Assembly (NCBI GenBank): GCA_965655095.1
Contig: OZ296659.1
Span: forward strand, 35,278,001-35,342,000
Origin: Haplodiscus bocki
Lineage: Eukaryota
Direction of reading: 5' to 3'
DNA length: 64,000 bases
Made by a program: the position numbers and the translations under genes
The notes under the pieces: model-generated
Told to the model about the DNA's origin: nothing
What the model saw: the letters and a program-made list of their open reading frames with translations, nothing else
The model's database searches: none
Shown: positions 28,001 through 64,000 of the stretch, piece by piece
Layout of the letters: every line of letters begins with the position of its first letter
Position numbering within the stretch: the first letter of the stretch is position 1

Positions 28001-28117
28001 TGCGCTCATAAATTGAGTGTGCCTACGAAATCATCGAATTTTGACTCTGATGTCTCTAAAGTTTCTGCTTTCACTCATTCAACCATTATTTTATCAGAAC
28101 TGATGAGGTTTTTGAGG

Positions 28118-31100
28118 TCTATGCCCGCAAGTGTTAACTATCACCCAGAGGCTCACATGCACTTCTGCGCACACGTGTGCTTGACGAAACGGAGTTACTC
28201 TAGTGATCTCGACTCCACTCGTTTTTTTTCTGGACAGATATATCCAAAAAGTTTAATGTGTTGGGTATTTGAGACAAACTACAGGCATTTTCCTTTTCAA
28301 CAGTGACTCCTTCTTAGTCATCATAGCAATTTTTGTGAGCTGTTTCTGCACTCTTGAGCTGCTTCGTGGACTTTTGAGACAGGAGGAAGAACGCTGACAT
28401 GAGCCGATTTCGATACGGGATTTTTGTTCTCAGGAAGAAATACTGAAGTTGTAAACTTACTGAAGCTTTCGCGTGAAGTTCTGGTCAGTCCATTTCCTGG
28501 ATCAAAGCCCAAAAATAGATACACGATTAGAAGGGCTAACGTCTGAAAGCATCAACACCCTCTGCATCTGCTTTTGATCTCCCACCTTTTCTTGCAGATT
28601 CTTTCATGCAATCAGGAAGTCCCTCATTTCCCCAAATTGTCACTCTGAGGTACGTCCAATATTTTTCTTTGTTGCAACCAATGCAGCTTTTTTCTGGATT
28701 CTTGACTTTTCGGAAACTTCCATCGCTCGCCGTGGTCTCCTCCAATTCTGAATCAAGCTTGTGCTCTGACCTTTCGCTTTGTTTTCCGGCGGCATGTTTG
28801 AGGTAAATCGATGCGGTTTCATTCAAACACGAATTGCGTCGACTTCCTATAGAACTTCCTACCAGTTAATGAGAAGAAATGGAACCTGCCTTAACTTCAG
28901 GTAACTCAGAGCTAACACACAATGGTATAGCCGTACTATAATTTTAGCTAACAATTGACTTGAGTGATACAACTTGTTTTTGTAAATCGTCATTCTAGGA
29001 CTGCAAGACGTCTTTGTATTTTGTCAACGAGGACACAAAATGTAGCCCGGGTTCGTGGAACTTTTCGGCTAACTCAATATAAATCTTCAGCGCTGGCGAA
29101 AATCGAAGCTGATTGGGTTGTGCACCCTATTTTTTCCCTTTATGCCAAAAAATCAATCTGAGTCGTTCTTTTTCTGACTCAGGAATCAAATATTTGACTT
29201 CACTGGAAACAACAATGTTCGCAGATACCCTTCGTGCGTTCCTTTTTTTAATTGGGAATGCTTGGGGCAATATCTTAATGTCTGAGATAAATGCCTGCAA
29301 CCTCTTTGCCCGCAAGTATTAACTATCACCCAGAGGCTCACATGCACTTCTGCGCACAGGTGTGCCTGATGAAACGGAGTTACTCCAGCGATCATGTCTC
29401 CACTCGCTTTTTTTCCGGACAGATACATCCAAAAACTTTGATGTGTTGGGTATTTGAGACAAAACTACAGGCGTTTTTAACAGTGACTCTTTTTTAGTCA
29501 TCAAAGCAACTTGCGAGCTGTTTCCGAAGATTTCTTTCATAATCTTTTCTCCGCCTTTATCGGAGAATATCGTTGATCATGATGAAACATCAATGTGTCA
29601 TTTTTTGACAGTGCCTTCCTGCAAAGAGATCTGTTGCCAACAACTTCAGCAACAGAGCAGTCGGGGGCTAAAAATAACCAGTCATTCCGACTGAAAAACA
29701 CCAGATTCTTTTTGATAACTGTATTCAAAGCGAAAGAAGTTCATCTGCATTGGAAAATACATTTTTTTTATCTTGTAACTTTATTGAAAAGAAAATTTGA
29801 GAAGCTTTATAAAAGTTGATACAAACATTGAGTTCGTGGAACTTGCTGCCAAAATTAATGACAAAATAGAAATTATTTTCTATAACTGCTTCATTAGGTG
29901 AATGCAATCAAGGAACTATCAAAAACATCAGAAGCAAAATCATCAACTCCGGAGCCAAAGTCCCCGTTTCCATTTCTTCCTCTTGTGTTGCTAATTGTAT
30001 CTCTCCTTGCTTTGTTGACTGCTCTTTTGGCTTCCAGGATACAGTTCTTCAAATATATTTCAGGAAAGTTGTTTTGTATTTCACATGATGAGTAAAAATG
30101 CTGCTACTTTTTTTTCGGTTAGAATTTGGAAACTGATCTTCGAAAAAGTAGCGCTTTTGCTATTAACGCAAATACTAACACTTACCAGCCAAAGATCTCG
30201 AAGTCGTTTTTGAGTGTTTTTCACAATATCGTTCTGTTGACTTCTTAACGTGCGTTTTTGAGACTGAAGGAAAAACGTGGACATCAGCCGGTTTCTATTC
30301 GGCAGTTTTGTTTTCAGTAAGAAATACTGCAAGATTACACTTCTTGAAGCCTTCGCTTGAAGTTCGTTCAGTGCACTTCCCTGTTAAAAGGATAAGAATA
30401 GCTACACGATTACAACGGCTAACGTATGAAGGCATCAACCCACTGCATCTGCTTGTGGTCTCACGGCTTTTCTTTCAGAATCAAAAATGCAATCAGGGAA
30501 TCCCTATTTTCCCCAATTGCCACTCTGAGGTACCTCCAATACTTCTCTTCATTGCAACATTTGCAGCTTTTTTCTTGAGTCGTGGCTTTTCAGAAACTTC
30601 GGTCCCTCGGCATGGGCACCTCCAATTCTGAATCAACCTTGGGCTCTGACTTCTCGTTTTGCTTCCCGGCAGCATCTTTAAGCTAAATTGATGCAGCTTC
30701 TTTCAAACACAAATTGCATTGAGTTCCTATAGAAGCTCCAAGCAGTTATTGAGAAAAAATGGACCCTTGCTTAAACTTCAGGTAACTCGGAGCTAACATA
30801 TAATGGTATGGATGTTCTATAATTTTCGCTAACAAGTGGCTCGAGCGAAACAACTTGTTCTTGTAAACTGTCATTCTGGGACTGCAAGACGTCTACGTTG
30901 TGCACCTTATTTCTTTCACTTTATGCCAAAAATCAATCTTAATGTTTATTTAATGTTTGATTGCACCGGAAACCACAATGTTGGCACATACCTTTCGTTT
31001 TTTCAATTGGGGAGGCTTGGGGTAGTATCTTATCGTCTGATACAAATTACTGGAACTTTTGTGTCCGTATGTATCAACTATCACCCAGAGGCTCACTTGA

Positions 31101-34100: not shown

Positions 34101-37100
34101 TCACAGAATCTTTCATGCAATCAGGGGAGTCCCTCATTTCCCCAAATTGCCACTCTGAGGTACCTTCATTACTTCTCTTTGTTGCGACAAATGCGGCTTT
34201 TTTCTGGAATCTTGCCTTTTCAGAAACTTCCATCGCTCGCCATGGGCTCCTCCAATTCTAAATCAAGCTTGTGCTCTGACATTTCGCTTTGCTTTCCGGC
34301 GGCATCTTTGAGGTAAATCGATGCGGTTTCATTCAAACACGAATTGCATCGACTTCCTAAAGAACTTCCTACCAGTTAATGAGAAGAAATGGAACCTGCC
34401 TAAACTTCAGGTAACTCAGAGCTAACACACAAGGGTATAGACGTACTATAATTTTCGCTAACAAGTGATTTGAGTGAAACAACTTGTTTTTGTAAATCGT
34501 CATTCTGGGACTGCAAGACGTTTTTATATTTTGTCAACAAGGACACAATTTGTAGCCCGGACTGTTGGATGTTTTCTGCTAACTCAATATATATTTGGAG
34601 CACTAGCGAAAATCCAAGCTGATTGGGTTGTGCACCCTATTTTTCTCACTTTATGCTAAAAATTCAATCTGAGTCGTTATTTTTCTAACTCAGGAATCAA
34701 ACTTTTGATTTCACCCGAAACAACACTGATCGCACATACCTTTCGTGTGTTCGTTTTTTCAATTAGGAAGGCTTGGGACAAGATCTTAATGTCTGAGACA
34801 AATGCCTGCAACTTCTATGCCTGCAAGTATTAACTATCACCGATAGGCTCACATGCACTTCTGCGCACAGGTGTGCTTGATGAAGCGGATTTTGACTCTA
34901 GGTATCACGACTTTGCTCGCTTTCTTTTTCCGGACTGATACATCCGAAAAGTTTGATGTGTTGGGTATTTGAGACAAAACTGCAAGCATTTTCCTTTTCA
35001 ACAGTGACTCCTTTTTAGTCCTCAAAGCAACTTCTGCGAGCTGTTTCTGAAGATTTCTTTCCACAACTTTTGCCGCATTTATCGGAGAAACTCATTGATC
35101 ATGATGAAACATCAATGTCTCATATTTTGACAGTGCCTTTTTGCAAAGAGATCTGTTGCCATCAACTTCAGCGAGAGAGCAGTGGGGGGTCAAAATTAAC
35201 CAGTCACTGCGACTGAAAAACAGCTGATTCTTTTTGATAACTGTATTCAAAACTATAGAAATTCATCTGCATTGGAAAATACATTTTCTTATCACGTAAC
35301 TTTATCGAAAATAAATTTCGAGAACTTATATAAAAGTTCATACAAACATTGAGTTCGTGAAACTTGCTGCCAAAATAATGACAACATAAGATTGAAACTA
35401 TATAGCTGATTCATTAGGTGAATGCAATCAAGGAATTCATTAATGACATCAGAATAAAAATCATCAACTTCAGATACAAATGCCCCGTCTCCATTTCATC
35501 CTGTTGTGTTGCTAATTGAAAATGTCCTTGCTTTGTTGACTGCTCTTCTGTTTTTGAAGAAAGAGTTCTTGGAATGTGGATAAGGGAACTTGTTTTGTGT
35601 TTCACCTGAACAGTGAAAATTCTGCTACTTATTTTTGAGTTAGATTTTGGAAACTGATCTCCCAAAAAATAGCGCTTTAGAGATTAACGGAGTTACTATC
35701 AACTACCAGCAAAATGTCTCGAAATCGTTTTCGAGCGTTGTCCAATATACCACTCTGCTGCCTTCAGAACGTGCATTTTTGAGACAGGAGGAAAAACGTA
35801 GACATGAGCCGGTTTCGATACGGGATTTTTGTTTTCAGGAAGAAATACCGAGGTTGTAAACTTACTGAAGCTTTCGCTTGAAGTTCTGTTCCGTACATTT
35901 CCTGGATCAAAGCCCAAGAATAGATACACCATTAGAAAGGCTAACGTCTGAAGGCATCAACAGCCTCTGCATCTTTTTTGATCTCCCACCTTTTCTTTCA
36001 GAGTCTTTCATGCAATCAAGGAGTCCTTCATTTCCCCAAATTGCCACTCTGAGGTACCTCCAATACTTCTTTGTTGCAACCAATGCAGCTTTTTTTGGAG
36101 TCTTGACTTTTCGGAAACTTCCATCGCTCGCCGTGGTCTCCTCCAATTCTGAATCAAGCTTGTGCTCTGAGCTTTCGCGTCGTTTTCCGGCGGCATCTTT
36201 GAGGTAAATCGATGCGGTTTCATTCAAACACGAATTGCTTCGACTTCCTAAAGAACTTCCTACCAGTTAATGAGAAGAAATGGAACCTGCCTTAACTTCA
36301 GGTAACTCAGAGCTAACGCACAATGGTATAGACGTACTATAGTTTTCGCTAACAAGTGACTTGAGTGAAACAACTTGTTTTTGTAAATCGTCATTCTGGC
36401 ACTGCAAGACGTTTTTATATTTTGTCAACAAGGACACAAGTTGTAGCCCGGACTGTTGGATGTTTTCTGCTAACTCAATAATATTTGGAGCACTAGCGAA
36501 AATCGAGAGAGCAGTGGGGGGTCAAAAATAACCAGTCACTGCGACTGAAAAACAGCTGATTCTTTTTGATAACTGTATTCAAAACTATAGAAATTCATCT
36601 GCATTGGAAAATACATTTTCTTATCACGTAACTTTATCGAAAATAAATTTCGAGAACTTATATAAAAGTTCATACAAACATTGAGTTCGTGAAACTTGCT
36701 GCCAAAATAATGACAATCAGAATAAAAATGCACCCTATTTTTCTCACTTTATGCTAAAAATTCAATCTGAGTCGTTATTTTTCTCACTCAGGAATCAAAC
36801 ATTTGATTTCACCCGAAACAACACTGATCGCACATACCTTTCGTGTGTTCGTTTTTTCAATTAGGAAGGCTTGGGACAAGATCTTAATGTCTGAGACAAA
36901 TGCCTGCAACTTCTATGCCCGCAAGTATTAACTATCACCGATAGGCTCACATGCACTTCTGCGCACAGGTGTGCTTGATGAAGCGGATTTTGACTCTAGG
37001 TATCACGACTTTGCTCGCTTTCTTTTTCCGGACTGATACATCCGAAAAGTTTGATGTGTTGGGTATTTGAGACAAAACTGCAAGCATTTTCCTTTTCAAC

Positions 37101-40100
37101 AGTGACTCCTTTTTAGTCCTCAAAGCAACTTCTGCGAGCTGTTTCTGAAGATTTCTTTCCACAACTTTTGCCGCATTTATCGGAGAAACTCATTGATCAT
37201 GATGAAACATCAATGTCTCATATTTTGACAGTGCCTTTTTGCAAAGAGATCTGTTGCCATCAACTTCAGCGAGAGAGCAGTGGGGGGTCAAAATTAACCA
37301 GTCACTGCGACTGAAAGACAGCTGATTCTTTTTGATAACTGTATTCAAAACTATAGAAATTCATCTGCATTGGAAAATACATTTTCTTATCACGTAACTT
37401 TATCGAAAATAAATTTCGAGAACTTATATAAAAGTTCATACAAACATTGAGTTCGTGAAACTTGCTGCCAAAATAATGACAACATAAGATTGAAACTATA
37501 TAGCTGATTCATTAGGTGAATGCAATCAAGGAATTCATTAATGACATCAGAATAAAAATCATCAACTTCAGATACAAATGCCCCGTCTCCATTTCATCCT
37601 GTTGTGTTGCTAATTGAAAATGTCCTTGCTTTGTTGACTGCTCTTCTGTTTTTGAAGAAAGAGTTCTTGGAATGTGGATAAGGGAACTTGTTTTGTGTTT
37701 CACCTGAACAGTGAAAATTCTGCTACTTATTTTTGAGTTAGATTTTGGAAACTGATCTCCCAAAAAATAGCGCTTTAGAGATTAACGGAGTTACTATCAA
37801 CTACCAGCAAAATGTCTCGAAATCGTTTTCGAGCGTTGTTCAATATACCACTCTGCTGCCTTCAGAACGTGCATTTTTGAGACAGGAGGAAAAACGTAGA
37901 CATGAGCCGGTTTCGATACGGGATTTTTGTTTTCAGGAAGAAATACTGAAGGTGTAATCTTACTGAAGCTTTCGCCTGAAGTTTTGTTCAGTCCATTTCC
38001 CGGCTGAAATCCCAAGAATAACTTCACGATTAGAAGGGCTAACGTCTGAAGGCATCAACACCCTCTGCATCTGCTGGTGGTCTCCCGCCTTGTCCTTCAG
38101 AATCTTTCAAGCATTCAGGGAGTCCCCCAAATTGCCACTCTGAAGTACCTCCAATACTTCTCTTTATTCCAAGCATTGCAGCTTTTTGCTGGAGTTTTGC
38201 CTTTTCAGAAACTTCCATGGCTCGCCATGGGCTCCTCCAATTCTCAATCAACCTTGTGCTCTGACCTTTTGTTTCGCTTTCCGTCGGAATCTTTGAGGTA
38301 AATTGATGCGGCTTCATTCAAACACGAATTGAATTGCATCGACTTCCTATAGAACCTCCTACCAGTGACTTACAAGAAGTGGAACCTTGCCTAAACTTCA
38401 GGTAACTCAAAGCTAACACACAGTGGTATAGACGTACTATAATTTTCGCTAACAAGTGACTTGAGTGAAACACCTTTTTTTGTAAATCGTCATTCTGGGA
38501 CTGCAAGACGTCTTTGTATTTTGTCATCGAGGACACAAAATGTAGCCCGGATTCGTGGAACTTTTCTGCTAACTCAATATAAATCTTCAGCGCTGGCGAA
38601 AATCGAAGCTGATTGGGTTGTGCACCCTATTTTTTCCCTTTATGCCAAAAAATCAATCTGAGTCGTTCTTTTTCTGACTCAGGAAACGAATATTTGACTT
38701 CACTGGAAACAACAATGTTCGCAGATACCCTTGGTGCGTTCCTTTTTTCAATTGGGAATGCTTGGGGCAAAATCTTAATGTCTGAGACAAATGCCTGCAA
38801 CTTCTATGCCCTCAAGTTTTAACTATCACCCAGAGGCTCACATGCACTTCTCCGCACAGGTGTGCTTGATGAAACGGAGTTACTCTAGCGATCATGTCTC
38901 CACTCGCTTTTTTTCCGGACAGATACATCCAAAAACTTTGATGTGTTGGCTATTTGAGACGAAACTACAAGCAATTTTAACAGTGACTCTTTTTTAGTCA
39001 TCGAAGCAAATTTTGCGTGCTTTTTCTGAAGAATTCATTCTAAATCTTTTTCCGCTTTTATCATAGAGACTCGTTGATCATGATGAAACATCAATGTCTC
39101 ATGATTTGACAGTGCTTTTTGGCGAAGGGATCTGTTGCCGTCAACTTCACCAAGAGAGCGGTCGGGGGACAAAAATAACCAGTCACTCCGACTGAAAAAC
39201 ACGTGATTCTTTTTAATAACTGTATTCAAAGCTATAGAAAATCATCTGCATTGGAAAATACTGTTTCTTATCACGTAACTTTAGTGAAAATAGTTTTCGA
39301 GAAGTTATATAAAAGTTATTACAAACATTGAGTTCGTGAAACTTGCTGCCAAAATAATGACAACATAAAAGTAAAACTTTATAGCTGATTCATTAGGTGA
39401 ATGCAATCAAGGACTTAATTGATAACATCAGAATAAAAATCATCAACTTCGGATAGAAAATCCGCGTCTCCATTTCATTCTGTTGTGTTGCTAATTGAAT
39501 ATGTCCTTGCTTTGTTGACTGCTCTTCTATTTTTGGAGAAAGAGTTCTGGAACTTGTGATAGGGAAACTTGTATTGCACCCGAAGAGTGAAATTTCTGCT
39601 ACTTATTTTTGAGTTAGATTTTGGAAACTGATCTCCAAAAATATAGCGTTTTAAAGATTAACGGAATTACTAACAACTACTAGCGAAATTTCTCGAAGTC
39701 GTTTTCGAGCGTTCTTCAATATACCATTCTGCTGACTTCAGAACGTGCATTTTTGAGACAGGAGGAAAAACGTAGACATGAGCCGGTTGCGATACGGGAT
39801 TTTTGTTTTCAGGAAGAAATACCGAGGTTGTAAACTTACTGAAACTTTCGCTTGAAGTTCTGTTCCGTCCATTTCCTGGATCAAAGCCCAAGAATAGATA
39901 CACCATCAGAAAGGCTAACGTCTGAAGGCATCAACACCCTCTGCATCTATTTTGATCTCCCACCTTTTCTTTCACAGAATCTTTCATGCAATCAGGGAGT
40001 CCCTCATTTCCCCAAATTGCCACTCTGAGGTACCTTCATTACTTCTCTTTGTTGCGACAAATGCGGCTTTTTTCTGGAATCTTGCCTTTTCAGAAACTTC

Positions 40101-43100
40101 CATCGCTCGCCATGGGCTCCTCCAATTCTAAATCAAGCTTGTGCTCTGACATTTCGCTTTGCTTTCCGGCGGCATCTTTGAGGTAAATCGATGCGGTTTC
40201 ATTCAAACACGAATTGCATCGACTTCCTAAAGAACTTCCTACCAGTTAATGAGAAGAAATGGAACCTGCCTAAACTTCAGGTAACTCAGAGCTAACACAC
40301 AAGGGTATAGACGTACTATAATTTTCGCTAACAAGTGATTTGAGTGAAACAACTTGTTTTTGTAAATCGTCATTCTGGGACTGCAAGACGTTTTTATATT
40401 TTGTCAACAAGGACACAATTTGTAGCCCGGACTGTTGGATGTTTTCTGCTAACTCAATATATATTTGGAGCACTAGCGAAAATCCAAGCTGATTGGGTTG
40501 TGCACCCTATTTTTCTCACTTTATGCTAAAAATTCAATCTGAGTCGTTATTTTTCTAACTCAGGAATCAAACTTTTGATTTCACCCGAAACAACACTGAT
40601 CGCACATACCTTTCGTGTGTTCGTTTTTTCAATTAGGAAGGCTTGGGACAAGATCTTAATGTCTGAGACAAATGCCTGCAACTTCTATGCCTGCAAGTAT
40701 TAACTATCACCGATAGGCTCACATGCACTTCTGCGCACAGGTGTGCTTGATGAAGCGGATTTTGACTCTAGGTATCACGACTTTGCTCGCTTTCTTTTTC
40801 CGGACTGATACATCCGAAAAGTTTGATGTGTTGGGTATTTGAGACAAAACTGCAAGCATTTTCCTTTTCAACAGTGACTCCTTTTTAGTCCTCAAAGCAA
40901 CTTCTGCGAGCTGTTTCTGAAGATTTCTTTCCACAACTTTTGCCGCATTTATCGGAGAAACTCATTGATCATGATGAAACATCAATGTCTCATATTTTGA
41001 CAGTGCCTTTTTGCAAAGAGATCTGTTGCCATCAACTTCAGCGAGAGAGCAGTGGGGGGTCAAAATTAACCAGTCACTGCGACTGAAAAACAGCTGATTC
41101 TTTTTGATAACTGTATTCAAAACTATAGAAATTCATCTGCATTGGAAAATACATTTTCTTATCACGTAACTTTATCGAAAATAAATTTCGAGAACTGATA
41201 TAAAAGTTCATACAAACATTGAGTTCGTGAAACTTGCTGCCAAAATAATGACAACATAAGATTGAAACTATATAGCTGATTCATTAGGTGAATGCAATCA
41301 AGGAATTCATTAATGACATCAGAATAAAAATCATCAACTTCAGATACAAATGCCCCGTCTCCATTTCATCCTGTTGTGTTGCTAATTGAAAATGTCCTTG
41401 CTTTGTTGACTGCTCTTCTGTTTTTGAAGAAAGAGTTCTTGGAATGTGGATAAGGGAACTTGTTTTGTGTTTCACCTGAACAGTGAAAATTCTGCTACTT
41501 ATTTTTGAGTTAGATTTTGGAAACTGATCTCCCAAAAAATAGCGCTTTAGAGATTAACGGAGTTACTATCAACTACCAGCAAAATGTCTCGAAATCGTTT
41601 TCGAGCGTTGTTCAATATACCACTCTGCTGCCTTCAGAACGTGCATTTTTGAGACAGGAGGAAAAACGTAGACATGAGCCGGTTTCGATACGGGATTTTT
41701 GTTTTCAGGAAGAAATACCGAGGTTGTAAACTTACTGAAGCTTTCGCTTGAAGTTCTGTTCCGTACATTTCCTGGATCAAAGCCCAAGAATAGATACACC
41801 ATTAGAAAGGCTAACGTCTGAAGGCATCAACAGCCTCTGCATCTTTTTTGATCTCCCACCTTTTCTTTCAGAGTCTTTCATGCAATCAAGGAGTCCTTCA
41901 TTTCCCCAAATTGCCACTCTGAGGTACCTCCAATACTTCTTTGTTGCAACCAATGCAGCTTTTTTTGGAGTCTTGACTTTTCGGAAACTTCCATCGCTCG
42001 CCGTGGTCTCCTCCAATTCTGAATCAAGCTTGTGCTCTGAGCTTTCGCGTCGTTTTCCGGCGGCATCTTTGAGGTAAATCGATGCGGTTTCATTCAAACA
42101 CGAATTGCTTCGACTTCCTAAAGAACTTCCTACCAGTTAATGAGAAGAAATGGAACCTGCCTTAACTTCAGGTAACTCAGAGCTAACGCACAATGGTATA
42201 GACGTACTATAGTTTTCGCTAACAAGTGACTTGAGTGAAACAACTTGTTTTTGTAAATCGTCATTCTGGCACTGCAAGACGTTTTTATATTTTGTCAACA
42301 AGGACACAAGTTGTAGCCCGGACTGTTGGATGTTTTCTGCTAACTCAATAATATTTGGAGCACTAGCGAAAATCGAGAGAGCAGTGGGGGGTCAAAAATA
42401 ACCAGTCACTGCGACTGAAAAACAGCTGATTCTTTTTGATAACTGTATTCAAAACTATAGAAATTCATCTGCATTGGAAAATACATTTTCTTATCACGTA
42501 ACTTTATCGAAAATAAATTTCGAGAACTTATATAAAAGTTCATACAAACATTGAGTTCGTGAAACTTGCTGCCAAAATAATGACAATCAGAATAAAAATG
42601 CACCCTATTTTTCTCACTTTATGCTAAAAATTCAATCTGAGTCGTTATTTTTCTCACTCAGGAATCAAACATTTGATTTCACCCGAAACAACACTGATCG
42701 CACATACCTTTCGTGTGTTCGTTTTTTCAATTAGGAAGGCTTGGGACAAGATCTTAATGTCTGAGACAAATGCCTGCAACTTCTATGCCCGCAAGTATTA
42801 ACTATCACCGATAGGCTCACATGCACTTCTGCGCACAGGTGTGCTTGATGAAGCGGATTTTGACTCTAGGTATCACGACTTTGCTCGCTTTCTTTTTCCG
42901 GACTGATACATCCGAAAAGTTTGATGTGTTGGGTATTTGAGACAAAACTGCAAGCATTTTCCTTTTCAACAGTGACTCCTTTTTAGTCCTCAAAGCAACT
43001 TCTGCGAGCTGTTTCTGAAGATTTCTTTCCACAACTTTTGCCGCATTTATCGGAGAAACTCATTGATCATGATGAAACATCAATGTCTCATATTTTGACA

Positions 43101-46100
43101 GTGCCTTTTTGCAAAGAGATCTGTTGCCATCAACTTCAGCGAGAGAGCAGTGGGGGGTCAAAATTAACCAGTCACTGCGACTGAAAAACAGCTGATTCTT
43201 TTTGATAACTGTATTCAAAACTATAGAAATTCACCTGCATTGGAAAATACATTTTCTTATCACGTAACTTTATCGAAAATAAATTTCGAGAACTTATATA
43301 AAAGTTCATACAAACATTGAGTTCGTGAAACTTGCTGCCAAAATAATGACAACATAAGATTGAAACTATATAGCTGATTCATTAGGTGAATGCAATCAAG
43401 GAATTCATTAATGACATCAGAATAAAAATCATCAACTTCAGATACAAATGCCCCGTCTCCATTTCATCCTGTTGTGTTGCTAATTGAAAATGTCCTTGCT
43501 TTGTTGACTGCTCTTCTGTTTTTGAAGAAAGAGTTCTTGGAATGTGGATAAGGGAACTTGTTTTGTGTTTCACCTGAACAGTGAAAATTCTGCTACTTAT
43601 TTTTGAGTTAGATTTTGGAAACTGATCTCCCAAAAAATAGCGCTTTAGAGATTAACGGAGTTACTATCAACTACCAGCAAAATGTCTCGAAATCGTTTTC
43701 GAGCGTTGTTCAATATACCACTCTGCTGCCTTCAGAACGTGCATTTTTGAGACAGGAGGAAAAACGTAGACATGAGCCGGTTTCGATACGGGATTTTTGT
43801 TTTCAGGAAGAAATACCGAGGTTGTAAACTTACTGAAGCTTTCGCTTGAAGTTCTGTTCCGTACATTTCCTGGATCAAAGCCCAAGAATAGATACACCAT
43901 TAGAAAGGCTAACGTCTGAAGGCATCAACAGCCTCTGCATCTTTTTTGATCTCCCACCTTTTCTTTCAGAGTCTTTCATGCAATCAAGGAGTCCTTCATT
44001 TCCCCAAATTGCCACTCTGAGGTACCTCCAATACTTCTTTGTTGCAACCAATGCAGCTTTTTTTGGAGTCTTGACTTTTCGGAAACTTCCATCGCTCGCC
44101 GTGGTCTCCTCCAATTCTGAATCAAGCTTGTGCTCTGAGCTTTCGCGTCGTTTTCCGGCGGCATCTTTGAGGTAAATCGATGCGGTTTCATTCAAACACG
44201 AATTGCTTCGACTTCCTAAAGAACTTCCTACCAGTTAATGAGAAGAAATGGAACCTGCCTTAACTTCAGGTAACTCAGAGCTAACGCACAATGGTATAGA
44301 CGTACTATAGTTTTCGCTAACAAGTGACTTGAGTGAAACAACTTGTTTTTGTAAATCGTCATTCTGGCACTGCAAGACGTTTTTATATTTTGTCAACAAG
44401 GACACAAGTTGTAGCCCGGACTGTTGGATGTTTTCTGCTAACTCAATAATATTTGGAGCACTAGCGAAAATCGAGAGAGCAGTGGGGGGTCAAAAATAAC
44501 CAGTCACTGCGACTGAAAAACAGCTGATTCTTTTTGATAACTGTATTCAAAACTATAGAAATTCATCTGCATTGGAAAATACATTTTCTTATCACGTAAC
44601 TTTATCGAAAATAAATTTCGAGAACTTATATAAAAGTTCATACAAACATTGAGTTCGTGAAACTTGCTGCCAAAATAATGACAATCAGAATAAAAATGCA
44701 CCCTATTTTTCTCACTTTATGCTAAAAATTCAATCTGAGTCGTTATTTTTCTCACTCAGGAATCAAACATTTGATTTCACCCGAAACAACACTGATCGCA
44801 CATACCTTTCGTGTGTTCGTTTTTTCAATTAGGAAGGCTTGGGACAAGATCTTAATGTCTGAGACAAATGCCTGCAACTTCTATGCCCGCAAGTATTAAC
44901 TATCACCGATAGGCTCACATGCACTTCTGCGCACAGGTGTGCTTGATGAAGCGGATTTTGACTCTAGGTATCACGACTTTGCTCGCTTTCTTTTTCCGGA
45001 CTGATACATCCGAAAAGTTTGATGTGTTGGGTATTTGAGACAAAACTACAAGCATTTTCCTTTTCAACAGTGACTCCTTTTTAGTCCTCAAAGAAACTTT
45101 TGCGAGCTGTTTCTGAAGAATTCTTTCCACAACTTTTGCCGCATTTATCGGAGAAACTCATTGATCATGATGAAACATCAATGTCTCATATTTTGACAGT
45201 GTCTTTTTGCAAAGAGATCTGTTGCCATCAACTTCAGCGAGAGAGCAGTGGGGGGTCAAAAATAACCAGTCACTGCGACTGAAAAACAGCTGATTCTTTT
45301 TGATAACTGTATTCAAAACTATAGAAATTCATCTGCATTGGAAAATACATTTTCTTATCACGTAACTTTATCGAAAATAAATTTCGAGAACTTATATAAA
45401 AGTTCATACAAACATTGAGCTCGTGAAACTTGCTGCCAAAATAATGACAACATAAGATTGAAACTATATAGCTGATTCATTAGGTGAATGCAATCAAGGA
45501 ATTCATTAATGACATCAGAATAAAAATCGTCAACTTCAGATACAAATGCCCCGTCTCCATTTCATCCTGTTGTGTTGCTAATTGAAAATGTCCTTGCTTT
45601 GTTGACTGCTCTTCTGTTTTTGAAGAAAGAGTTCTTGGAATGTGGATAAGGAAACTTGTTTTGTGTTTCACTTGAACAGTGAAAATTCTGCTACTTATTT
45701 TTGAGTTAGATTTTGGAAACTGATCTCCCAAAAAATAGCGCTTTAGAGATTAACGGATTTACTAACAACTACCAGCAAAATGTCTCGAAATTGTTTTCGA
45801 GCGTTGTTCAATATACCACTCTGCTGACTTCAGAACGTCCATTTTTGAGACAGGAGGAAAAACGTAGACATGAGCCGGTTTCGATACGGGATTTTTGTTT
45901 TCAGGAAGAAATACCGAGGTTGTAAACTTACTGAAGCTTTCGCTTGAAGTTCTGTTCCGTCCATTTCCTGGATCAAAGCCCAAGAATAGATACACCATTA
46001 GAAAGGCTAACGTCTGAAGGCATCAACACCCTCTGCATCTTTTTTGATCTCCCACCTTTTCTTTCAGAGTCTTTCATGCAATCAAGGTGTCCTTCATTTC

Positions 46101-49100
46101 CCCAAATTGCCACTCTGAGGTACCTCCAATACTTTTTGTTGCAACCAATGCAGATTTTTTTGGAGTCTTGACTTTTCGGAAACTTCCATCGCTCGCCGTG
46201 GTCTCCTCCAATTCTGAATCAAGCTTGTGCTCTGAGCTTTTGTTTCGCTTTCCGTCGGAATCTTTGAGGTAAATCGATGCGGTTTCATTCAAACACGAAT
46301 TGCATCGACTTCTTATAGAACTTCCTACCAGTTAATGAGAAGACATGGAACCTGCATTAACTTCAGGTAACTCAGAGCTAACACACAATGGTATAGCCGT
46401 ACTATAATTTTCGCTAACAAGTGACTTGAGTGAAACAACTTGTTTTTGTAAATCGTCATTCTGGGACTGCGAGACGTCTTTGTATTTTGTCAACGAGGAC
46501 ACAAATTGTAGCCCAGATTGGTGGAACTTTTCTGCTAACTCGATATGAATCTTCAGCACTGGCGAAAATCGAAGCTGATTGGGTTGTGTACCCTGTTTTT
46601 TCCCTTTATGCCAAAAAATCAATCTGAGTCGTTCTTTTCCTGACTCAGGAATCAAATATTTGACTTCACTGGAAACAACAATGTTCGCGGATACCCTTGG
46701 TGCGTTCCTTTTTTTAATTGGGAATGCTTGGGCCAATATCTTAATGTCTGAGACAAATGCCTGCAATTCTATGCCCACAAGTATTAACTATCACCCAGAG
46801 GCTCACATGCACTTCTGCGCACAGGTGTGCCTGATGAAACGGAGTTACTCCAGCGATCATGTCTCCACTCGCTTTTTTTCCGGACAGATACATCCAAAAA
46901 CTTTGATGTGTTGGGTTTTTGAGACAAAACTACAGGCATTTTTAACAGTGACTCTTTTTTAGTCATCAAAGTAACTTTTGCGAGCTCTTTCCGAAGATTT
47001 CATACAAAATCTTTTTCCGCATTTATCAGAGAGACTCGTTGATCATGATGAAACATCATCGTCTCATAATTTGACAGTGCTTTTTGGCGAAGGGATCTGT
47101 TGCCATCAACTTCAGCAAGAGAGCAGTCGGGGGTCAAAAATAACCAGTCACTCCGACTGAAAAACAACTGATTCTTTTTGATAACTGTCATCAAAACTAT
47201 AGAAAGTCATCTGCATTGGAAATTACATTTTATCACATAACTTTATTGAAAATAAATTTCGAGAAGTTTTATAAAAGTTAATACAAACCTTGAGTTCGTG
47301 GAACTTGCTGCCAAAATAATGACAACATAAAATTAAAATTTTATAGCTGATTCATTAGGTGAATGGAATCAAGGAATTCATTAATAACATCAGAATAAAA
47401 ATCATCGACTTCGGATACAAAATCCCCGCGTACATTTCATGCTGCTGTGTTGCTAATTGTATCTGTCCTTGCTTTGTTGACCTCTCTTCTGTTCTTGAAG
47501 AAAGAGTTCTTGAAATCTGGATAAGGAAACTTGTTTTGTATTCCACCTGAAGAGTGAAAATTCTGCTACTTATTTTTGAGTTAGATTTTGGAAACTGATC
47601 TCCAAAAATATAGCGCTTTAGAGATTAACGGATTTACTAACAACTACCAGCAAAATGTCTCGAAATTGTTTTCGAGCGTTGTTCAATATACCACTCTGCT
47701 GACTTCTGAACGTGCATTTTTGAGACAGGAGGAAAAACGTAGACATGAAACGGTTTCGATAAGGGATTTTTGTTTTCAGGAAGAAATACCGAGGTTGTAA
47801 ACTTACTGAAACTTTCGCTTGAAATTCTGTTCCGTCCATTTCCTGCATCAAAGCCCAAGAATAGATACACCATCAGAAAGGCTAACGTCTGAAGGCATCA
47901 ACACCCTCTGCATCTATTTTGATCTCCCACCTTTTCTTTCAGAGTCTTTCATACAATCAAGGAGTCCTTCATTTCCCCAAATTGCCACTCTGAGGTACCT
48001 CCATTACTTCTCTTTGTTGCGACCAAGGCAGCTTTTTTCTGGAGTCTTGACTTTTCGGAAACTTCCATCGCTCGCCGTGGTCTCCTCCAATTCTGAATCA
48101 AGCTTGTGCTCTGACCTTTTGCTTTGTTTTCCGGCGGCATCTTTGAGGTAAATCGATGCGGTTTCATTCAAACACGAATTGCGTCGACTTCCTATAGAAC
48201 TTCCTACCAGTTAATGAGAAGAAATGGAACCTGCCTAAACTTCAGGTAACTCAGAGCTAACACACAATGGTATAGCCGTATTATAATTTTCGCTAACAAG
48301 TGACTTGAGTGAAACAACTTGTTTTTGTAAATCGTCATTCTAGGACTGCAAGATGTCTTTATATTTTGTCAACGAGGACACAAATTGTAGCCCGGATTGG
48401 TGGAACTTTTCTGGTAACTCAATATAAATCTTCATTGCTGGCGAAAATCGAAGCTGATTGGGTTGTGCACCTTATTTTCTTCACTTTATGCCAAAAAATC
48501 TATCTGAGTCGTTCTTTTTCTGACTCAGGAATCAAATATTTGACTTCACTGGAAAGAACAATGTTGGCAGATACGCTTCGTGTGTTCCTTTTCTCAATTG
48601 GGAAGTCTTGGGGCAGTATCTAAATGTCTGAGACAAATGCCTGCGACTTCTATGCCCACAAGTATTAACTATCACCCAGAGGCTCACATGCACTTCTGCG
48701 CACAGGTGTGTTTTTTTAAACGGAGTTACTCTAGCGATCACGTCTCCACTCGCTTTTTTTTCCGGACAGATACTTCCAAAAACTTTGATGTGTTGGGTAT
48801 TTGAGACAAAACTACATGCATTTTTAACAGTGACTCTTTTTTTGTCATCAAAGCAACTTTTGCGAGCTGTTTCCGAAGATTTCATTCATAATCTTTTTCC
48901 GCTATTATGAGAGAGACTCGTTGATCATGATGAAACATCAATGTCTCATAATTTCACAGTGCTTTTTGGCGAAGCGATCTGTTGCCATCAACTTCAGCAA
49001 GAGAGCAGTCGGGGGTCGATAATAACCAGGCACTCCGACTGAAAAACAACTGGTTCTTTTTGAAAATTGTATTCAAAACTATAGAAAGTCATCTGCATTG

Positions 49101-58100: not shown

Positions 58101-61100
58101 TCTGCGCACAGGTGTGCTTGATGAAACGGAGTTACTTTAGTGATCTCGACTCCACTCGCTTTTTTTCCGGACAGATACATCCGAAAAGTTTGATGTGTTG
58201 GGTGTTTGAGACAAAACTACAGTCATTTTCATTTTCAACAGTGACTCCTTTTCAGTCATCGAAGCAACTTTTGCGAGCTGGTTTTGAAGAATTCATTCCA
58301 CATCTTTTGCCGCCTTCATCGGAGAAACTCGTTGATCATGATGAAACATCATCGTCTCATAATTTGACAGTGCTTTTTGGCGAAGGGATCTGTTGCCATC
58401 AACTTCAGCAAGAGAGCAGTCGGGGGTCAAAAATAACCATTCACTCCGACTGAAAAACAACTGATTCTTTTTGATAACTGTAATCAAAACTATAGAAATT
58501 CATCTGCATTGGAAAATACATTTTCTTATCACGTAACTTTATTGAAAATAAATTTGGAGAAGTTATATAAAAGTTAATACAAACATTGAGTCCGTGAAAC
58601 TTGCTGTCAAAATAATGACAACATAAAATTAAAACTTTATAGCTGATTCATTAGGTGAATGCAATCAAGGACTTAATTGATAACATCAGAATAAAAATCA
58701 TCAACTTCGGATAGAAAATCCCCGTCTCCATTTCATTCTGTTGTGTTGCTAATTGAATATGTCCTTGCTTTGTTGACTGCTCTTCTATTTTTGGAGAAAG
58801 AGTTCTGGAACTTGTGATAAGGAAACTTGTATTTCACCCGAAGAGTGAAATTTCTGCTACTTATTTTTGAGTTAGATTTTGGAAACTGATCTCCAAAAAT
58901 ATAGCGTTTTAAAGATTAACGGAATTACTAACAACTACTAGCGAAATTTCTCGAAATTGTTCTCGAGCGTTTTTCAACATACCACTCTGCTGACTTCAGA
59001 ATGTCCATTTTCGAGACAGGAGGAAGAACGTAGACATGGGCCGCTTTCGATACGGGTTTTTTGTTCTCAGGAAGAAATACTGAAGTTGTAAACTTACTGA
59101 AGCTTTCGCTTGAAGTTCTGTTCAGTCCATTTCCTGGATCAAAGCCCAAGAATAGATACACGATTAGAAGGGCTAACGTCTGAATGCATCAACACCCTCT
59201 GCATCTGCTTTTGATCTCCCACCTTTTCTTTCAGAATCTTTTATGCAATCAGGGAGTCCCTTATTTCCCCAAATTGCCACTCTGAGGTACCTCCAATACT
59301 TCTCTTTGTTGCAACCAATGCAGCTTTTTTCTGGATTCTTGCCTTTTCAGAAACTTCCATCGCTCGCCATGGGCTCCTCCTTGTTCTGAATCAAGCTTGT
59401 GCTCTGACCTTTCGCTTTGCTGTCCGGCGGCATCTTTGAGGTAAATCGATGCGGTTTCATTCAAACACGAATTGCTTCGACTTCCTAAAGAACTTCCTAC
59501 CAGTTAATGAGAAGAAATGGAACCTGCCTTAACTTCAGGTAACTCAGAGCTAACGCACAATGGTATAGACGTACTATAGTTTTCGCTAACAAGTGACTTG
59601 AGTGAAACACCTTTTTTTTGTAAATCGTGAATCTGGGACTGCAAGACGTCTTTGAAATTTGTCAACAAGGACACAATTTGTAGCCCGGACTGTTGGATCT
59701 TTTCTGCTAACTCAATATATATTTGCAACACTGGCGAAAATCGAAGCTGATTGGGTTGTGCACCCTATTTATCTCACTTTATGCCAAAAATTCAATCCAA
59801 GTCGTTATTTTTCCAACTCAGGAATCAAGTTTTTGATTTCACCGGAAACAACACTGTTCGCACATACTTTTCGTGTGTTCGTTTTTTTCAATTAGGAAGG
59901 CTTGGAGCAATATCTTAATGTCTAAGACAAATGCCTGCAACTTCTATGCCCGCAAGTATTAACTATCACCCAGAGGCTCACATGCACTTCTGCGCACAGG
60001 TGTGCTTGATGAAACGGAGTTACTTTAGTGATCTCGACTCCACTCGCTTTTTTTCCGGACAGATACATCCGAAAAGTTTGATGTGTTGGGTGTTTGAGAC
60101 AAAACTACAGTCATTTTCATTTTCAACAGTGACTCCTTTTCAGTCATCGAAGCAACTTTTGCGAGCTGGTTTTGAAGAATTCATTCCACATCTTTTGCCG
60201 CCTTCATCGGAGAAACTCGTTGATCATGATGAAACATCATCGTCTCATAATTTGACAGTGCTTTTTGGCGAAGGGATCTGTTGCCATCAACTTCAGCAAG
60301 AGAGCAGTCGGGGGTCAAAAATAACCATTCACTCCGACTGAAAAACAACTGATTCTTTTTGATAACTGTAATCAAAACTATAGAAATTCATCTGCATTGG
60401 AAAATACATTTTCTTATCACGTAACTTTATTGAAAATAAATTTGGAGAAGTTATATAAAAGTTAATACAAACATTGAGTCCGTGAAACTTGCTGTCAAAA
60501 TAATGACAACATAAAATTAAAACTTTATAGCTGATTCATTAGGTGAATGCAATCAAGGACTTAATTGATAACATCAGAATAAAAATCATCAACTTCGGAT
60601 AGAAAATCCCCGTCTCCATTTCATTCTGTTGTGTTGCTAATTGAATATGTCCTTGCTTTGTTGACTGCTCTTCTATTTTTGGAGAAAGAGTTCTGGAACT
60701 TGTGATAAGGAAACTTGTATTTCACCCGAAGAGTGAAATTTCTGCTACTTATTTTTGAGTTAGATTTTGGAAACTGATCTCCAAAAATATAGCGTTTTAA
60801 AGATTAACGGAATTACTAACAACTACTAGCGAAATTTCTCGAAATTGTTCTCGAGCGTTTTTCAACATACCACTCTGCTGACTTCAGAACGTCCATTTTT
60901 GAGACAGGAGGAAGAACGTAGACATGGGCCGGTTTCGATACGGGTTTTTTGTTCTCAGGAAGAAATACTGAAGTTGTAAACTTACTGAAGCTTTCGCTTG
61001 AAGTTCTGTTCAGTCCATTTCCTGGATCAAAGCCCAAGAATAGATACACGATTAGAAGGGCTAACGTCTGAATGCATGAACACCCTCTGCATCTGCTTTT

Positions 61101-64000
61101 GATCTCCCACCTTTTCTTTCAGAATCTTTTATGCAATCAGGGAGTCCCTTATTTCCCCAAATTGCCACTCTGAGGTACCTCCAATACTTCTCTTTGTTGC
61201 AACCAATGCAGCTTTTTTCTGGATTCTTGCCTTTTCAGATACTTCCATCGCTCGCCGTGGGCTCCTCCTTGTTCTGAATCAAGCTTGTGCTCTGACCTTT
61301 CGCTTTGCTGTCCGGCGGCATCTTTGAGGTAAATCGATGCGGTTTCATTCAAACACGAATTGCTTCGACTTCCTAAAGAATTTCCTACCAGTTAATGAGA
61401 AGAAATGGAACCTGCCTTAACTTCAGGTAACTCAGAGCTAGCGCACAATGGTATAGACGTACTATAGTTTTCGCTAACAAGTGACCTGAGTGAAACACCT
61501 TTTTTTTGTAAATCGTCAATCTGGGACTGCAAGACGTCTTTGAAATTTGTCAACAAGGACACAATTTGTAGCCCGGACTGTTGGATCTTTTCTGCTAACT
61601 CAATATATATTTGCAGCACTGGCGAAAATCGAAGCTGATTGGGTTGTGCACCCTATTTATCTCACTTTATTCCAAAAATTCAATCCGAGTCGTTATTTTT
61701 CTAACTCAGGAATCAAGTTTTTGATTTCACCGGAAACAACACTTCGCACATACTTTTCGTGTGTTCGTTTTTTTCAATTAGGAAGGCTTGGAGCAATATC
61801 TTAATGTCTAAGACAAATGCCTGCAACTTCTATGCCCGCAAGTATTAACTATCACCCAGAGGCTCACATGCACTTCTGCGCACAGGTGTGCTTGATGAAA
61901 CGGAGTTACTCTAGTGATCTCGACTCCACTCGCTTTTTTTCCGGACAGATACATCCAAAAACTTTGATGTGTTGGGTTTTGGAGACAAAACTACAGGCAT
62001 TTTTAACAGTTACTCTTTTTTAGTCATCAAAGCAACTTTTGCGAGCTGTTTCTGAAGATTTCATTCCACATCTTTTGCCGCATTCATCGGAGAAACTCGT
62101 TGATCATGAAACATCAATGTCCCATATTTTGACAGTGCCTTTTTGCAAAAAGATCTGTTGCCATCAACTTCAGCAAGAGAGCAGTCGGGGGTCTAAAATA
62201 ACCAGTCACTGGGACTGAAAAACAACTGATTCTTTTTGATAACTGTAATCAAAACTATAGAAATTCATCTGCATTGGAAAATACATTTTCTTATCACGTA
62301 ACTTTATTGAAAATAAATTTGGAGAAGTTATATAAAAGTTAATACAAACTTTGAGTCCGTGAAACTTGCTGTCAAAATAATGACAGCATAAAATTAAAAC
62401 TTTATAGCTGATTCATTAGGTGAATGCAATCAAGGAATTAATTGATAACATCAGAATAAAAATCATCAACTTCGGATAGAAAATCCCCGTCTCCATTTCA
62501 TTCTGTTGTGTTGCTAATTGAATATGTCCTTGCTTTGTTGACTGCTCTTCTGTTTTTGGAGAAAGAGTTCTGGAACTTGTGATAAGGAAACTTGTATTTC
62601 ACCCGAAGAGTGAAATTTCTGCTACTTATTTTTGAGTTAGATTTTGGAAACTGATCTCCAAAAATATAGCGTTTTAAAGATTAACGGAATTACTAACAAC
62701 TACCAGCGAAATTTCTCGAAATTGTTCTCGAGCGTTTTTCAACATACCACTCTGCTGACTTCAGAACGTCCATTTTCGAGACAGGAGGAAGAACGTAGAC
62801 ATGGGCCGCTTTCGATACGGGTTTTTTGTTCTCAGGAAGAAATACTGAAGTTGTAAACTTACTGAAGCTTTCGCTTGAAGTTCTGTTCAGTCCATTTCCT
62901 GGATCAAAGCCCAAGAATAGATACACGATTAGAAGGGCTAACGTCTGAATGCATCAACACCCTCTGCATCTGCTTTTTTGATCTCCCACCTTTTCTTTCA
63001 GAATCTTTTATGCAATCAGGGAGTCCCTTATTTCCCCAAATTGCCACTCTGAGGTACCTCCAATACTTCTCTTTGTTGCAACCAATGCAGCTTTTTTCTG
63101 GATTCTTGCCTTTTCAGAAACTTCCATCGCTCGCCATGGGCTCCTCCTTGTTCTGAATCAAGCTTGTGCTCTGACCTTTCGCTTTGCTGTCCGGCGGCAT
63201 CTTTGAGGTAAATCGATGCGGTTTCATTCAAACACGAATTGCTTCGACTTCCTAAAGAACTTCCTACCAGTTAATGAGAAGAAATGGAACCTGCCTTAAC
63301 TTCAGGTAACTCAGAGCTAACGCACAATGGTATAGACGTACTATAGTTTTCGCTAACAAGTGACTTGAGTGAAACACTTTTTTTTGTAAATCGTCAATCT
63401 GGGACTGCAAGACGTCTTTGAAATTTGTCAACAAGGACACAATTTGTAGCCCGGACTGTTGGATCTTTTCTGCTAACTCAATATATATTTGCAGCACTGG
63501 CGAAAATCGAAGCTGATTGGGTTGTGCACCCTATTTATCTCACTTTATGCCAAAAATTCAATCCAAGTCGTTATTTTTCTAACTCAGGAATCAAGTTTTT
63601 GATTTCACCGGAAACAACACTGTTCGCACATACTTTTCGTGTGTTCGTTTTTTTCAATTAGGAAGGTTTGGAGCAATATCTTAATGTCTAAGACAAATGC
63701 CTGCAACTTCTATGCCCGCAAGTATTAACTATCACCCAGAGGCTCACATGCACTTCTGCGCACAGGTGTGCTTGATGAAACGGAGTTACTCTAGTGATCT
63801 CGACTCCACTCGTTTTTTTTCCGGACAGATACATCCGAAAAGTTTGATGTGTTGGGTGTTTGAGACAAAACTACAGTCATTTTCATTTTCAACAGTGACT
63901 CCTTTTCAGTCATCGAAGCAACTTTTGCGAGCTGGTTCTGTAGAATTCATTCCACATCTTTTGCCGCCTTCATCGGAGAAACTCGTTGATCATGATGAAA
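28118..64000. repeat. Tandem macrosatellite array, about 19 monomers of about 1.88 kb (three 2098-bp variants), continuing past the window end
   Basis: The anchor ttaactatcacc.a.aggctcacatgcacttctgcgcac recurs at about 28134, 29320, 31075, 32948, 34830, 36928, 38819, 40700, 42798, 44896, 46785, 48665, 50550, 52431, 54312, 56192, 58071, 59959, 61845 and 63725. The ORF track repeats with the same periods. Confidence 0.98.
45470..47200 (-). pseudogene. Representative array monomer: eroded gene with a coiled-coil-like segment and putative BEN-like domain
   Basis: ORF-track pieces (NTVIKK..., TKKESLL..., LQAFVSDIK..., NETASIYLKD...) lie in one frame in the consensus. Most separating stops are sense codons in some other copy. 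KYWRYLRVAIWGNEGL (intact e.g. at 28.6, 36.0 and 42.0 kb; frameshifted in this copy) resembles a BEN-domain helix. Confidence 0.55.

What the first reader, a model, noticed from the sequence alone, without database searches (positions are those of the whole stretch)
28118..64000. The 1.88-kb satellite is a decayed tandem GENE array encoding a coiled-coil plus BEN-like protein
Seen: stitching minus-strand ORF pieces gives one consensus frame of about 400 codons, from LNTVIKKNQLF to VDAFRR. The interrupting stops are polymorphic. EKDxx* is open in the 34.9-kb copy, LRA* is K at 29.3 kb, GKK* is Q at 46.6 kb, SSH* is open at 32.5 kb, and GSF* is R at 28.7 and 36.1 kb. Only the PLGDS* stop looks fixed, whereas random AT-rich DNA would give roughly one stop per 15-20 codons. 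The frame contains a heptad-like stretch (LTKYKDVLQSQNDDLQKQVVSLKSLVSEN), a Ser-rich linker and KYWRYLRVAIWGNEGL. From memory this motif aligns with the BEN-domain helix of BEND5-type proteins (KYTKNLAVMIWGTDVL). Established: BEN domains are DNA/chromatin-binding modules, often paired with coiled coils, and occur in animal insulator/repressor proteins, poxviruses, polydnaviruses and transposon-linked genes. Inference: one intron-poor BEN gene, possibly TE- or virus-derived, was amplified as one gene per repeat unit, in a D4Z4/DUX4-like layout, and kept expanding after the ORF began to decay. Intact copies may exist elsewhere in the array or genome.
Basis: partly seen in the sequence, partly recalled or inferred. 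Interest (0 to 1): 0.88.

Follow-up and report, generated by a model that had tools for sequence, protein, structure and literature searches.

The report
Satellite copied from a transposon gene
A 150-kb tandem repeat on this animal chromosome is a 1.88-kb inner piece of one old jumping gene (a DNA transposon) copied about 80 times on the spot. Each unit carries the dead remains of the transposon's small accessory gene, so this is a transposon-derived satellite, a known kind of repeat, and not a working gene array.

Summary
The 1.88-kb satellite is real. It runs from window 28118 to the window end and on to about C12:35456737, roughly 150 kb and 80 units.

The minus strand of each unit is colinear, at about 65% DNA identity, with an internal segment (L021:4519-6399) of a large dispersed DNA transposon. 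That transposon has a 999-aa SET-plus-transposase ORF with weak CACTA/Mirage-type matches.

The array sits inside one old copy of that transposon. A decayed transposase lies to its left (window 24346-28077) and the transposon's upstream part lies to its right. So it arose in place by tandem amplification.

Each unit holds three coding blocks of the transposon's second accessory gene: an N-domain, a heptad-like stretch and a 65-aa C-domain. These blocks lie in different frames and need splicing in the transposon itself, so there is no single 400-codon frame.

Blocks B and C diverged from the transposon under purifying selection (dN/dS about 0.3). Inside the array evolution is neutral, and 0 of 33 units are intact.

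BEN: Pfam and PDB sequence searches are negative, but fold and language-model searches point to BEN. I read it as a distant BEN-like domain, not proven.

The scan noted this array before (s1-362033) and a similar transposon-derived satellite elsewhere in this genome (s1-381246).

The parts
24346..28077 (-). 3' part of one old, decayed copy of the transposon. The SET-plus-transposase ORF remnant lies at about 25075-27904, followed by the transposon's 3' non-coding tail down to at least 24346.
   Evidence: tblastn of the 999-aa ORF of L021 covers residues 1-998 in several frames at 26-62% identity. blastn matches L021:6656-9835 at 69-72% identity. Other copies carry the match down to 24346. No ORF of 110 aa or more survives here.
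28118..28620 (-). Rearranged, truncated units at the left edge of the array: a fragment of block A, then a spacer fragment.
   Evidence: Self-BLAST: 28118-28348 matches unit positions 684-919, and 28365-28626 matches unit positions 1640-1900. A PLGDS* motif sits at 28151.
28118..64000 (-). Tandem array of about 1.88-kb units, each equal to transposon segment L021:~4519-6399. It continues past the window to about C12:35456737.
45291..47165 (-). Reference unit cut in transposon phase (junction to junction).
   Evidence: MAFFT alignment of 33 units with L021:4519-6399.
46664..47151 (-). Block A: remnant of the accessory gene's N-terminal domain (WLFLTPD...) and its Ser-rich linker. The start codon is GTG instead of ATG in 31 of 33 units. 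A stop at about codon 48 is shared, and the block ends at PLGDS*.
46422..46556 (-). Block B: the heptad-like stretch (LTKYKDV...). It is open in 26 of 33 units.
46010..46268 (-). Block C: acidic linker plus the 65-aa BEN-like domain (KYWRYLRVAIWGNEGL ... VDAFRR*). This unit is frameshifted.
45343..46009 (-). Non-coding spacer, equal to transposon 5741-6399. Its distal half is the most variable part of the unit.
28539..28802 (-). An open copy of block C (88 codons without a stop) in the oldest unit.
46332..46778 (-). The longest fully open ORF on this strand in the window that spans block B (148 aa). It covers block B plus the stretch between A and B, which carries stops in the transposon and in most other units.
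34131..45900 (.). Recently duplicated multi-unit blocks. 34131-36030 and 40001-41900 are 99.9% identical, and 2.1-kb variant units recur at 36025, 41895 and 43993.

Best explanation
The array is a transposon-derived satellite born in place.

One old copy of a large DNA transposon (over 11 kb) inserted here. Its order is: accessory module 1, accessory module 2, then a SET-plus-transposase gene. A 1.88-kb internal segment was duplicated in tandem. That segment runs from about 14 bp upstream of the start codon of module 2 to about 0.66 kb downstream of its last coding block. The duplication possibly used a short GTTTTT microhomology. Unequal exchange then expanded it to about 80 units (150 kb).

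Each unit therefore contains one copy of module 2: an N-domain, a heptad-like stretch and a small C-terminal domain with a BEN-like fold. In live transposons this gene is presumably a spliced DNA- or chromatin-binding helper of transposition.

In the array the gene is dead. The start codon is lost and a stop is shared by nearly all units, so the copy was already broken when, or soon after, amplification began. The units now drift neutrally while being reshuffled by recent block duplications.

Shown: the homology, the flanks, the neutrality and the lack of intact copies. Inferred: the duplication mechanism, the splicing model and the DNA-binding role.
For: 1. Colinearity. The unit's minus strand aligns over its full length with L021:4519-6399 at about 65% identity.
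2. The source is a mobile element. Copies on C8, C4, C2 and C12 are 99.6-99.7% identical over up to about 10 kb of shared sequence, and an intact 999-aa ORF was read in L021 and L022. That ORF carries SET (PF00856, above cut-off) plus weak Transposase_21 and DUF1258 matches at the same place in four diverged homologues.
3. Flanks in the right order and orientation. Decayed transposase at window 24346-28077. Transposon positions 29-3521 at L041:4753-5955, just past the far end of the array.
4. The coding blocks are real. Module 2's C-domain has a paralogue in module 1 (31% identity, E 4e-6) and 22 homologues in other organisms. Three of these lie 1-1.2 kb upstream of SET/transposase ORFs.
5. 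Selection before amplification, none after. For block C, transposon versus satellite gives dN/dS of 0.24-0.45 (about 0.3 against L021). Differences by codon position in blocks B plus C are 26/26/48 (p = 0.008), with flat controls. Within the array: 143/124/118 by codon position (p = 0.27), synonymous fraction 0.20 against 0.23 expected, new stops 20 against 20.6 expected, and equal diversity in coding blocks and the gaps between them.
6. 0 of 33 units are intact.
7. BEN-like fold.
Against: - Its superfamily therefore rests on sub-threshold Pfam matches.
- No RNA data exist here. The four runs found behave like DNA. The exon model of module 2, and whether the array is silent, are untested.
- Block A shows no third-position excess between transposon and satellite, so its coding status rests on an open frame in young copies and a weak paralogy (E 0.001).
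- Both edges of the array are rearranged and not cleanly colinear.
- The BEN assignment fails every sequence-based test.
Confidence: 0.85

Rival explanations
1. One reading: a gene array in the D4Z4/DUX4 sense. A BEN-type gene was amplified as a gene, with usable or recently usable copies somewhere in the array. The amplification mattered for dosage or function.
For: One gene remnant per unit. Block C is open in 8 of 33 units and block B in 26 of 33. Many more open C copies lie further along the array.
Against: No unit of 33 is open in all blocks. The ATG is lost in 31 of 33, and the stop at codon 48 of block A is shared even by the most diverged units. There is no codon-position bias, no synonymous excess and no deficit of new stops within the array. 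The number of open C copies fits neutral decay of an 88-codon frame at 5-10% divergence; that is my own estimate, not a tool result.
Confidence: 0.05
2. Reverse direction: the transposon family picked up a pre-existing satellite unit, or the array was formed elsewhere and moved here, so the satellite is not derived from the transposon.
For: Satellite and transposon are only about 65% identical. No closer parent copy was found.
Against: The shared segment contains a conserved protein module. That module has a paralogue inside the transposon and homologues next to SET/transposase ORFs in another organism. It evolved under purifying selection before amplification. The array is bracketed by the matching transposon parts at similar divergence, 69-72%. 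All strong hits to the satellite lie at this one locus.
Confidence: 0.03
3. The array has a non-coding function acquired after its birth. For example, it may be a small-RNA (piRNA-like) source that silences the still-active transposon family, or it may be structural heterochromatin.
For: It carries about 80 antisense-capable copies of a gene of a family with 99.6-99.7% identical, probably active, members. Recent block duplications show ongoing turnover.
Against: At 65% DNA identity few small RNAs would match the active family. There is no RNA evidence at all. Diversity is flat along the unit apart from one more variable spacer, so no conserved non-coding core is visible.
Confidence: 0.07

Closest known systems
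Transposon-derived satellites, e.g. Chenopodium CficCl-61-40 from the tnp2 region of the CACTA-like element Jozin (PMC7320549), and Tetris-derived satellite in Drosophila virilis (PMC4079207); review PMC9659126
   Same: A satellite whose unit is an internal piece of a DNA transposon of the CACTA/tnp2 kind. The array is physically attached to the parental element.
   Different: Here the unit is long (1.88 kb). It comprises a whole accessory gene plus spacer, not a 40-bp transposase fragment or terminal repeats. Both flanks of the parental copy are still in place at a single locus.
D4Z4 / DUX4 macrosatellite
   Same: A kilobase-scale unit with one protein-gene copy per unit.
   Different: D4Z4 units keep an intact DUX4 ORF. 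Here 0 of 33 units are intact and evolution is neutral. This gene also needs splicing.
BEN domain proteins (Pfam PF10523; solved: NACC1 8yzs, Bsg25A 4x0g, BEND6 7yul, BANP 7yuk)
   Same: A small, mostly helical domain of about 65-75 aa, preceded by a heptad-like stretch. The best structural matches of the model are BEN domains.
   Different: No sequence-profile match to PF10523 or to solved BEN chains. Z is only 2.1-3.1, and the model's pLDDT is 69. The domain ends at the stop codon a little short of a full BEN.
CACTA / EnSpm / Mirage (CMC) DNA transposons
   Same: The large ORF matches Transposase_21 (tnp2) and DUF1258 over the same 120 residues in four homologues. The element is multi-copy with near-identical members.
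   Different: All transposase matches are below Pfam's cut-offs. The ORF starts with a SET domain. Terminal repeats were not seen. Two BEN-like accessory modules lie upstream.

Membership tests
Satellite / tandem repeat | Head-to-tail copies of one unit over a long stretch | tested here: met
   About 19 units in the window. 33 full units were read. Hits run on to C12:~35456737.
Transposon-derived satellite | The unit is homologous over its whole length to part of a dispersed mobile element | tested here: met
   Colinear with L021:4519-6399 at about 65% identity. Per-segment identity is 56-74%.
Transposon-derived satellite | The array is attached to the rest of the parental element (in-place origin) | tested here: met
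   Transposase remnant to the left and transposon 5' part to the right, in the correct order and strand. Both junctions are rearranged.
BEN domain (PF10523) | Match to the Pfam model at or above its gathering score | tested here: not met
   No hit for satellite pieces, transposon pieces or 10 homologues at E up to 1-10. A six-frame search of the genome with PF10523 does not touch the element.
BEN domain (PF10523) | BEN fold | tested here: inconclusive
   Model pLDDT is 69. The all-against-48,161-chain structural search (pdb_via_wide) puts NACC1 BEN top at Z 3.1, rmsd 3.4 over 68 residues, and 4 of 14 rows are BEN. The Atlas shape search's top hit is a BEN-bearing cluster at TM 0.66. Foldseek against PDB and BFVD gives nothing.
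BEN domain (PF10523) | Sequence-specific DNA binding | not testable with these tools
   Needs the protein and a binding assay.
CACTA/EnSpm (CMC) transposon | DDE transposase of the tnp2 type | tested here: inconclusive
   Transposase_21 E-values run from 0.0007 to 0.09 and DUF1258 from 0.0001 to 0.02, all below cut-off but at the same residues in four homologues.
CACTA/EnSpm (CMC) transposon | Terminal inverted repeats (CACTA-type) and target-site duplication | not tested
Gene macrosatellite (D4Z4-like) | At least some units keep an intact ORF under purifying selection | tested here: not met
   0 of 33 intact. Neutral pattern within the array.
Coiled coil | Heptad periodicity or a predicted long helix in block B | not tested
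   Judged by eye only. Pfam gives only weak helical DUF hits.

The most novel reading that the evidence does not exclude
The accessory module (N-domain, heptad-like stretch, 65-aa C-domain) would be a previously undescribed, very divergent BEN-type DNA-binding family. It travels in two paralogous copies with SET-fused CACTA-like transposases of marine animals. The 150-kb array of its dead copies would serve as a decoy or small-RNA source against the still-active family.
Probability: 0.1. Interest if true: 0.6.

Novelty: new member of a known kind. Interest (0 to 1): 0.3.

Why it matters
The origin of a satellite can rarely be traced. Here the parent is still visible on both sides of the array, and the breakpoints can be placed to within a few bases: about 14 bp upstream of a start codon, and inside the spacer before the transposase.

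That makes it a clean textbook case of a macrosatellite born from an internal transposon segment. It also gives a dated contrast between purifying selection before amplification and neutrality after it.

It warns that "fossil ORFs" in satellites can be real without the array ever having been a gene array.

As a side product it points to a small conserved domain family, possibly a divergent BEN, that accompanies SET-fused transposases.

Tried and rejected
- Tandem Repeats Finder cannot see the array, because its longest period is 500.
- A DNA search of the genome with one unit was not scored: too many candidates.
- Pfam on six satellite ORFs and on the transposon pieces gave only chance-level hits.
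- phmmer and a profile against PDB sequences gave no BEN.
- The first AlphaFold model, from the shallow 17-sequence alignment, was unusable at pLDDT 52.
- Foldseek against PDB, the second-look search limited to Foldseek's own PDB hits (pdb_via) and BFVD gave nothing.
- The Atlas search of module 1's C-domain among named clusters gave nothing.
- The Atlas search of the N-domain gave only unnamed arthropod clusters at 0.88.
- RNA evidence: both run searches found only four runs of one study, none on record as RNA. Laying them on L021:2450-8400 gave even cover and no GT..AG joints, so they behave as DNA.
- My first guesses at splice sites were wrong when checked against the letters. What is there is GTTAGT after block B and after block C. 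The phase of the second does not fit a direct join to the transposase exon, so I make no claim of a fusion.
- A lower count of variant alleles in the coding blocks looked like constraint. It is due to one hypervariable spacer, not to conserved exons.
Majority bases were used only inside scripts for counting. The element is a cut-and-paste-type transposon, not a virus.
Full report
**The repeat.**
Self-BLAST with one unit shows head-to-tail copies from 28118 to the window end. The period is 1.875-1.90 kb, with a few 2.09-kb variants and a rearranged left edge at 28118-28620. The 18 full units in the window are 81-100% identical. The two leftmost are the most diverged, and blocks of several units recur at 99.9-100% identity. 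The window is G000:C12:35278001-35342000 in a 1.5-Gb genome. Protein-level hits show the array running on to about C12:35456737, which makes roughly 150 kb and 80 units. The last dozen or so units are a 1.77-kb variant.

**The claimed frame.**
I counted, for each codon column of the unit alignment, how many units carry a stop. All six frames have 25-35 stops that are present in at least half of the units, per 628 codons. The longest majority-open gap (120 codons) is on the plus strand. So there is no consensus 400-codon frame. Openness alone is therefore no better than chance. Homology is what gives the signal.

**Homology to a transposon.**
The 148-aa ORF (window 46332-46778, minus strand) hits copies on seven or more other chromosomes at 35-48% identity, besides the array itself. 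Three fetched copies (L021-L023) carry a 170-aa ORF, the matching pieces, and a large ORF that is a single 999 aa in L021 and L022 and broken in L023. The large ORF has a SET domain above Pfam's cut-off and weak Transposase_21 matches. Four diverged homologues repeat SET, Transposase_21 and DUF1258 at the same residues. Copies on different chromosomes are 99.6-99.7% identical over up to about 10 kb of shared sequence, so this is a young mobile family. Earlier notes of this scan describe the same SET-plus-CACTA pairing elsewhere in the genome.

The minus strand of a satellite dimer is colinear with L021:4519-6399 over the whole unit at about 65% identity. By segment, identity is 71-74% in the coding blocks (63% in the Ser-rich linker of block A) and 56-72% in the stretches between and after them.

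**Anatomy of the source segment.**
In the transposon there are two paralogous accessory modules upstream of the transposase:
- Module 1 lies at L021:2615-3187 plus 3636-3923.
- Module 2 lies at 4533-5045 (block A), about 5151-5285 (block B) and 5477-5743 (block C).

The C-domains of the two modules are 31% identical (E 4e-6). The N-domains are 28% identical (E 0.001). Blocks A and B share a frame but are separated by two stops, and block C is in another frame. The gene must therefore be spliced. GTTAGT follows both B and C. Without RNA I cannot fix the model, and I make no claim that it joins the transposase exon.

The satellite unit starts about 14 bp upstream of module 2's ATG and ends about 0.66 kb past block C. 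The two breakpoints share GTTTTT in the L021 family, which suggests microhomology but does not prove it.

**Origin in place.**
To the left of the array, window 24346-28077 (minus strand) is the decayed transposase and 3' tail of the same kind of element, 69-72% identical to L021:6656-9835 and beyond. To the right of the array's far end, L041:4753-5955 matches L021:29-3521. Order and strand are those of a single insertion with the array in the place of module 2. Both junctions carry deletions and rearranged fragments.

**Selection.**
For block C, transposon versus satellite gives dN/dS of 0.24-0.45 (about 0.3 against L021), and satellite versus satellite gives 0.5-2.1. Differences between the transposon and the majority satellite base in blocks B plus C fall 26/26/48 by codon position (p = 0.008). 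Block A and three non-coding controls are flat.

Within 33 units:
- Variant alleles fall 143/124/118 by codon position (p = 0.27).
- The synonymous fraction is 0.20 against 0.23 expected from the non-coding spectrum.
- New stops number 20 against 20.6 expected.
- Diversity is the same in coding blocks and in the gaps between them. Only the distal spacer is more variable.

Block B is open in 26 of 33 units, block C in 8 and block A in none. The ATG is GTG in 31 of 33, and a stop near codon 48 is shared by nearly all units, including a diverged one at 31.3 kb. So the gene was dead at or near the start of the expansion and has drifted since.

**BEN or not.**
Sequence tests are negative.

A profile search of 1.84 billion representatives found 22 relatives. 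All are short exon-like ORFs, several from marine metagenomes. Three of them lie 1-1.2 kb upstream of SET/transposase ORFs in contigs of another organism. The domain is therefore a conserved companion of this transposase.

With these sequences the AlphaFold model reached pLDDT 69: a short hairpin followed by four helices. Against 48,161 solved chains only 14 reach Z of 2 or more. The best is the NACC1 BEN domain (Z 3.1, rmsd 3.4, 68 residues), and three more are BEN domains: Bsg25A, BEND6 and BANP. The Atlas shape search puts a BEN-bearing cluster first at TM 0.66, and the Atlas feature search puts BEN-bearing clusters first at 0.91 with 173 shared features. Foldseek against PDB, pdb_via and BFVD give nothing.

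I put the odds that this is a true, very divergent BEN at about 60%. It is not a member by Pfam's rule.

**Expression.**
No RNA run is on record. The four runs that hold the sequence cover a transposon copy evenly and show no splice-like joints. Expression of the array and of the transposon gene is therefore untested.

**Comparison and verdict.**
Satellites born from transposons are well documented, including one from the tnp2 region of a CACTA-like element (PMC7320549; see also the list). This scan has already met one in this genome (s1-381246) and has noted this same array beyond the window (s1-362033).

The present case is a new member of that kind. It is notable for its long unit containing a whole accessory gene, and for keeping both parental flanks. 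But the single 400-codon frame and the D4Z4-like reading do not hold.

Noticed in passing
L021 (C8:66699357-66709356), L022, L029, L030: A young, probably active transposon family. Copies on four chromosomes are 99.6-99.7% identical over up to about 10 kb of shared sequence. An intact 999-aa SET-plus-transposase ORF was read in L021 and L022. The element is longer than 11 kb and its ends were not reached.
   Followed up: partly
L021:2615-3923 and L021:4533-5743: The transposon carries two paralogous accessory modules (N-domain plus BEN-like C-domain) in tandem upstream of the transposase. L052 from another organism shows two C-domain copies upstream of its transposase as well.
   Followed up: partly
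L021:4507 and 7794 (read-laying table 5c, runs X2 and X3): Contigs join transposon position 4507 to 7794 with 38 foreign letters between. This is an internal-deletion derivative whose left breakpoint lies within about 12 bp of the satellite unit's junction (about 4519). It may be a recurrent break site.
   Followed up: no
window 45343-45680 and the same part of every unit (transposon 6061-6399 equivalent): The distal half of the spacer is markedly more variable than the rest of the unit: pi 0.114 against 0.06-0.075, with 77% of columns polymorphic.
   Followed up: no
C12:35431000-35456737 (L041:1-4738): The far end of the array consists of a 1.77-kb unit variant that lacks about 350 bp (transposon 4873-5228 equivalent).
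   Followed up: no
L049-L051 (marine metagenome contigs), L052-L054 (one ENA sample): Relatives of the C-domain occur in Tara and other marine metagenome contigs, and in large eukaryotic contigs of another sample. This suggests the transposon family is spread among marine animals.
   Followed up: partly
L021:5286-5291 and 5737-5742: The same hexamer, GTTAGT, follows coding blocks B and C. It may be this gene's donor splice motif.
   Followed up: no
L022:5966-10000: This otherwise 99.6%-identical copy loses homology to L021 upstream of L021:4342. It is either a 5'-truncated copy or an insertion.
   Followed up: no
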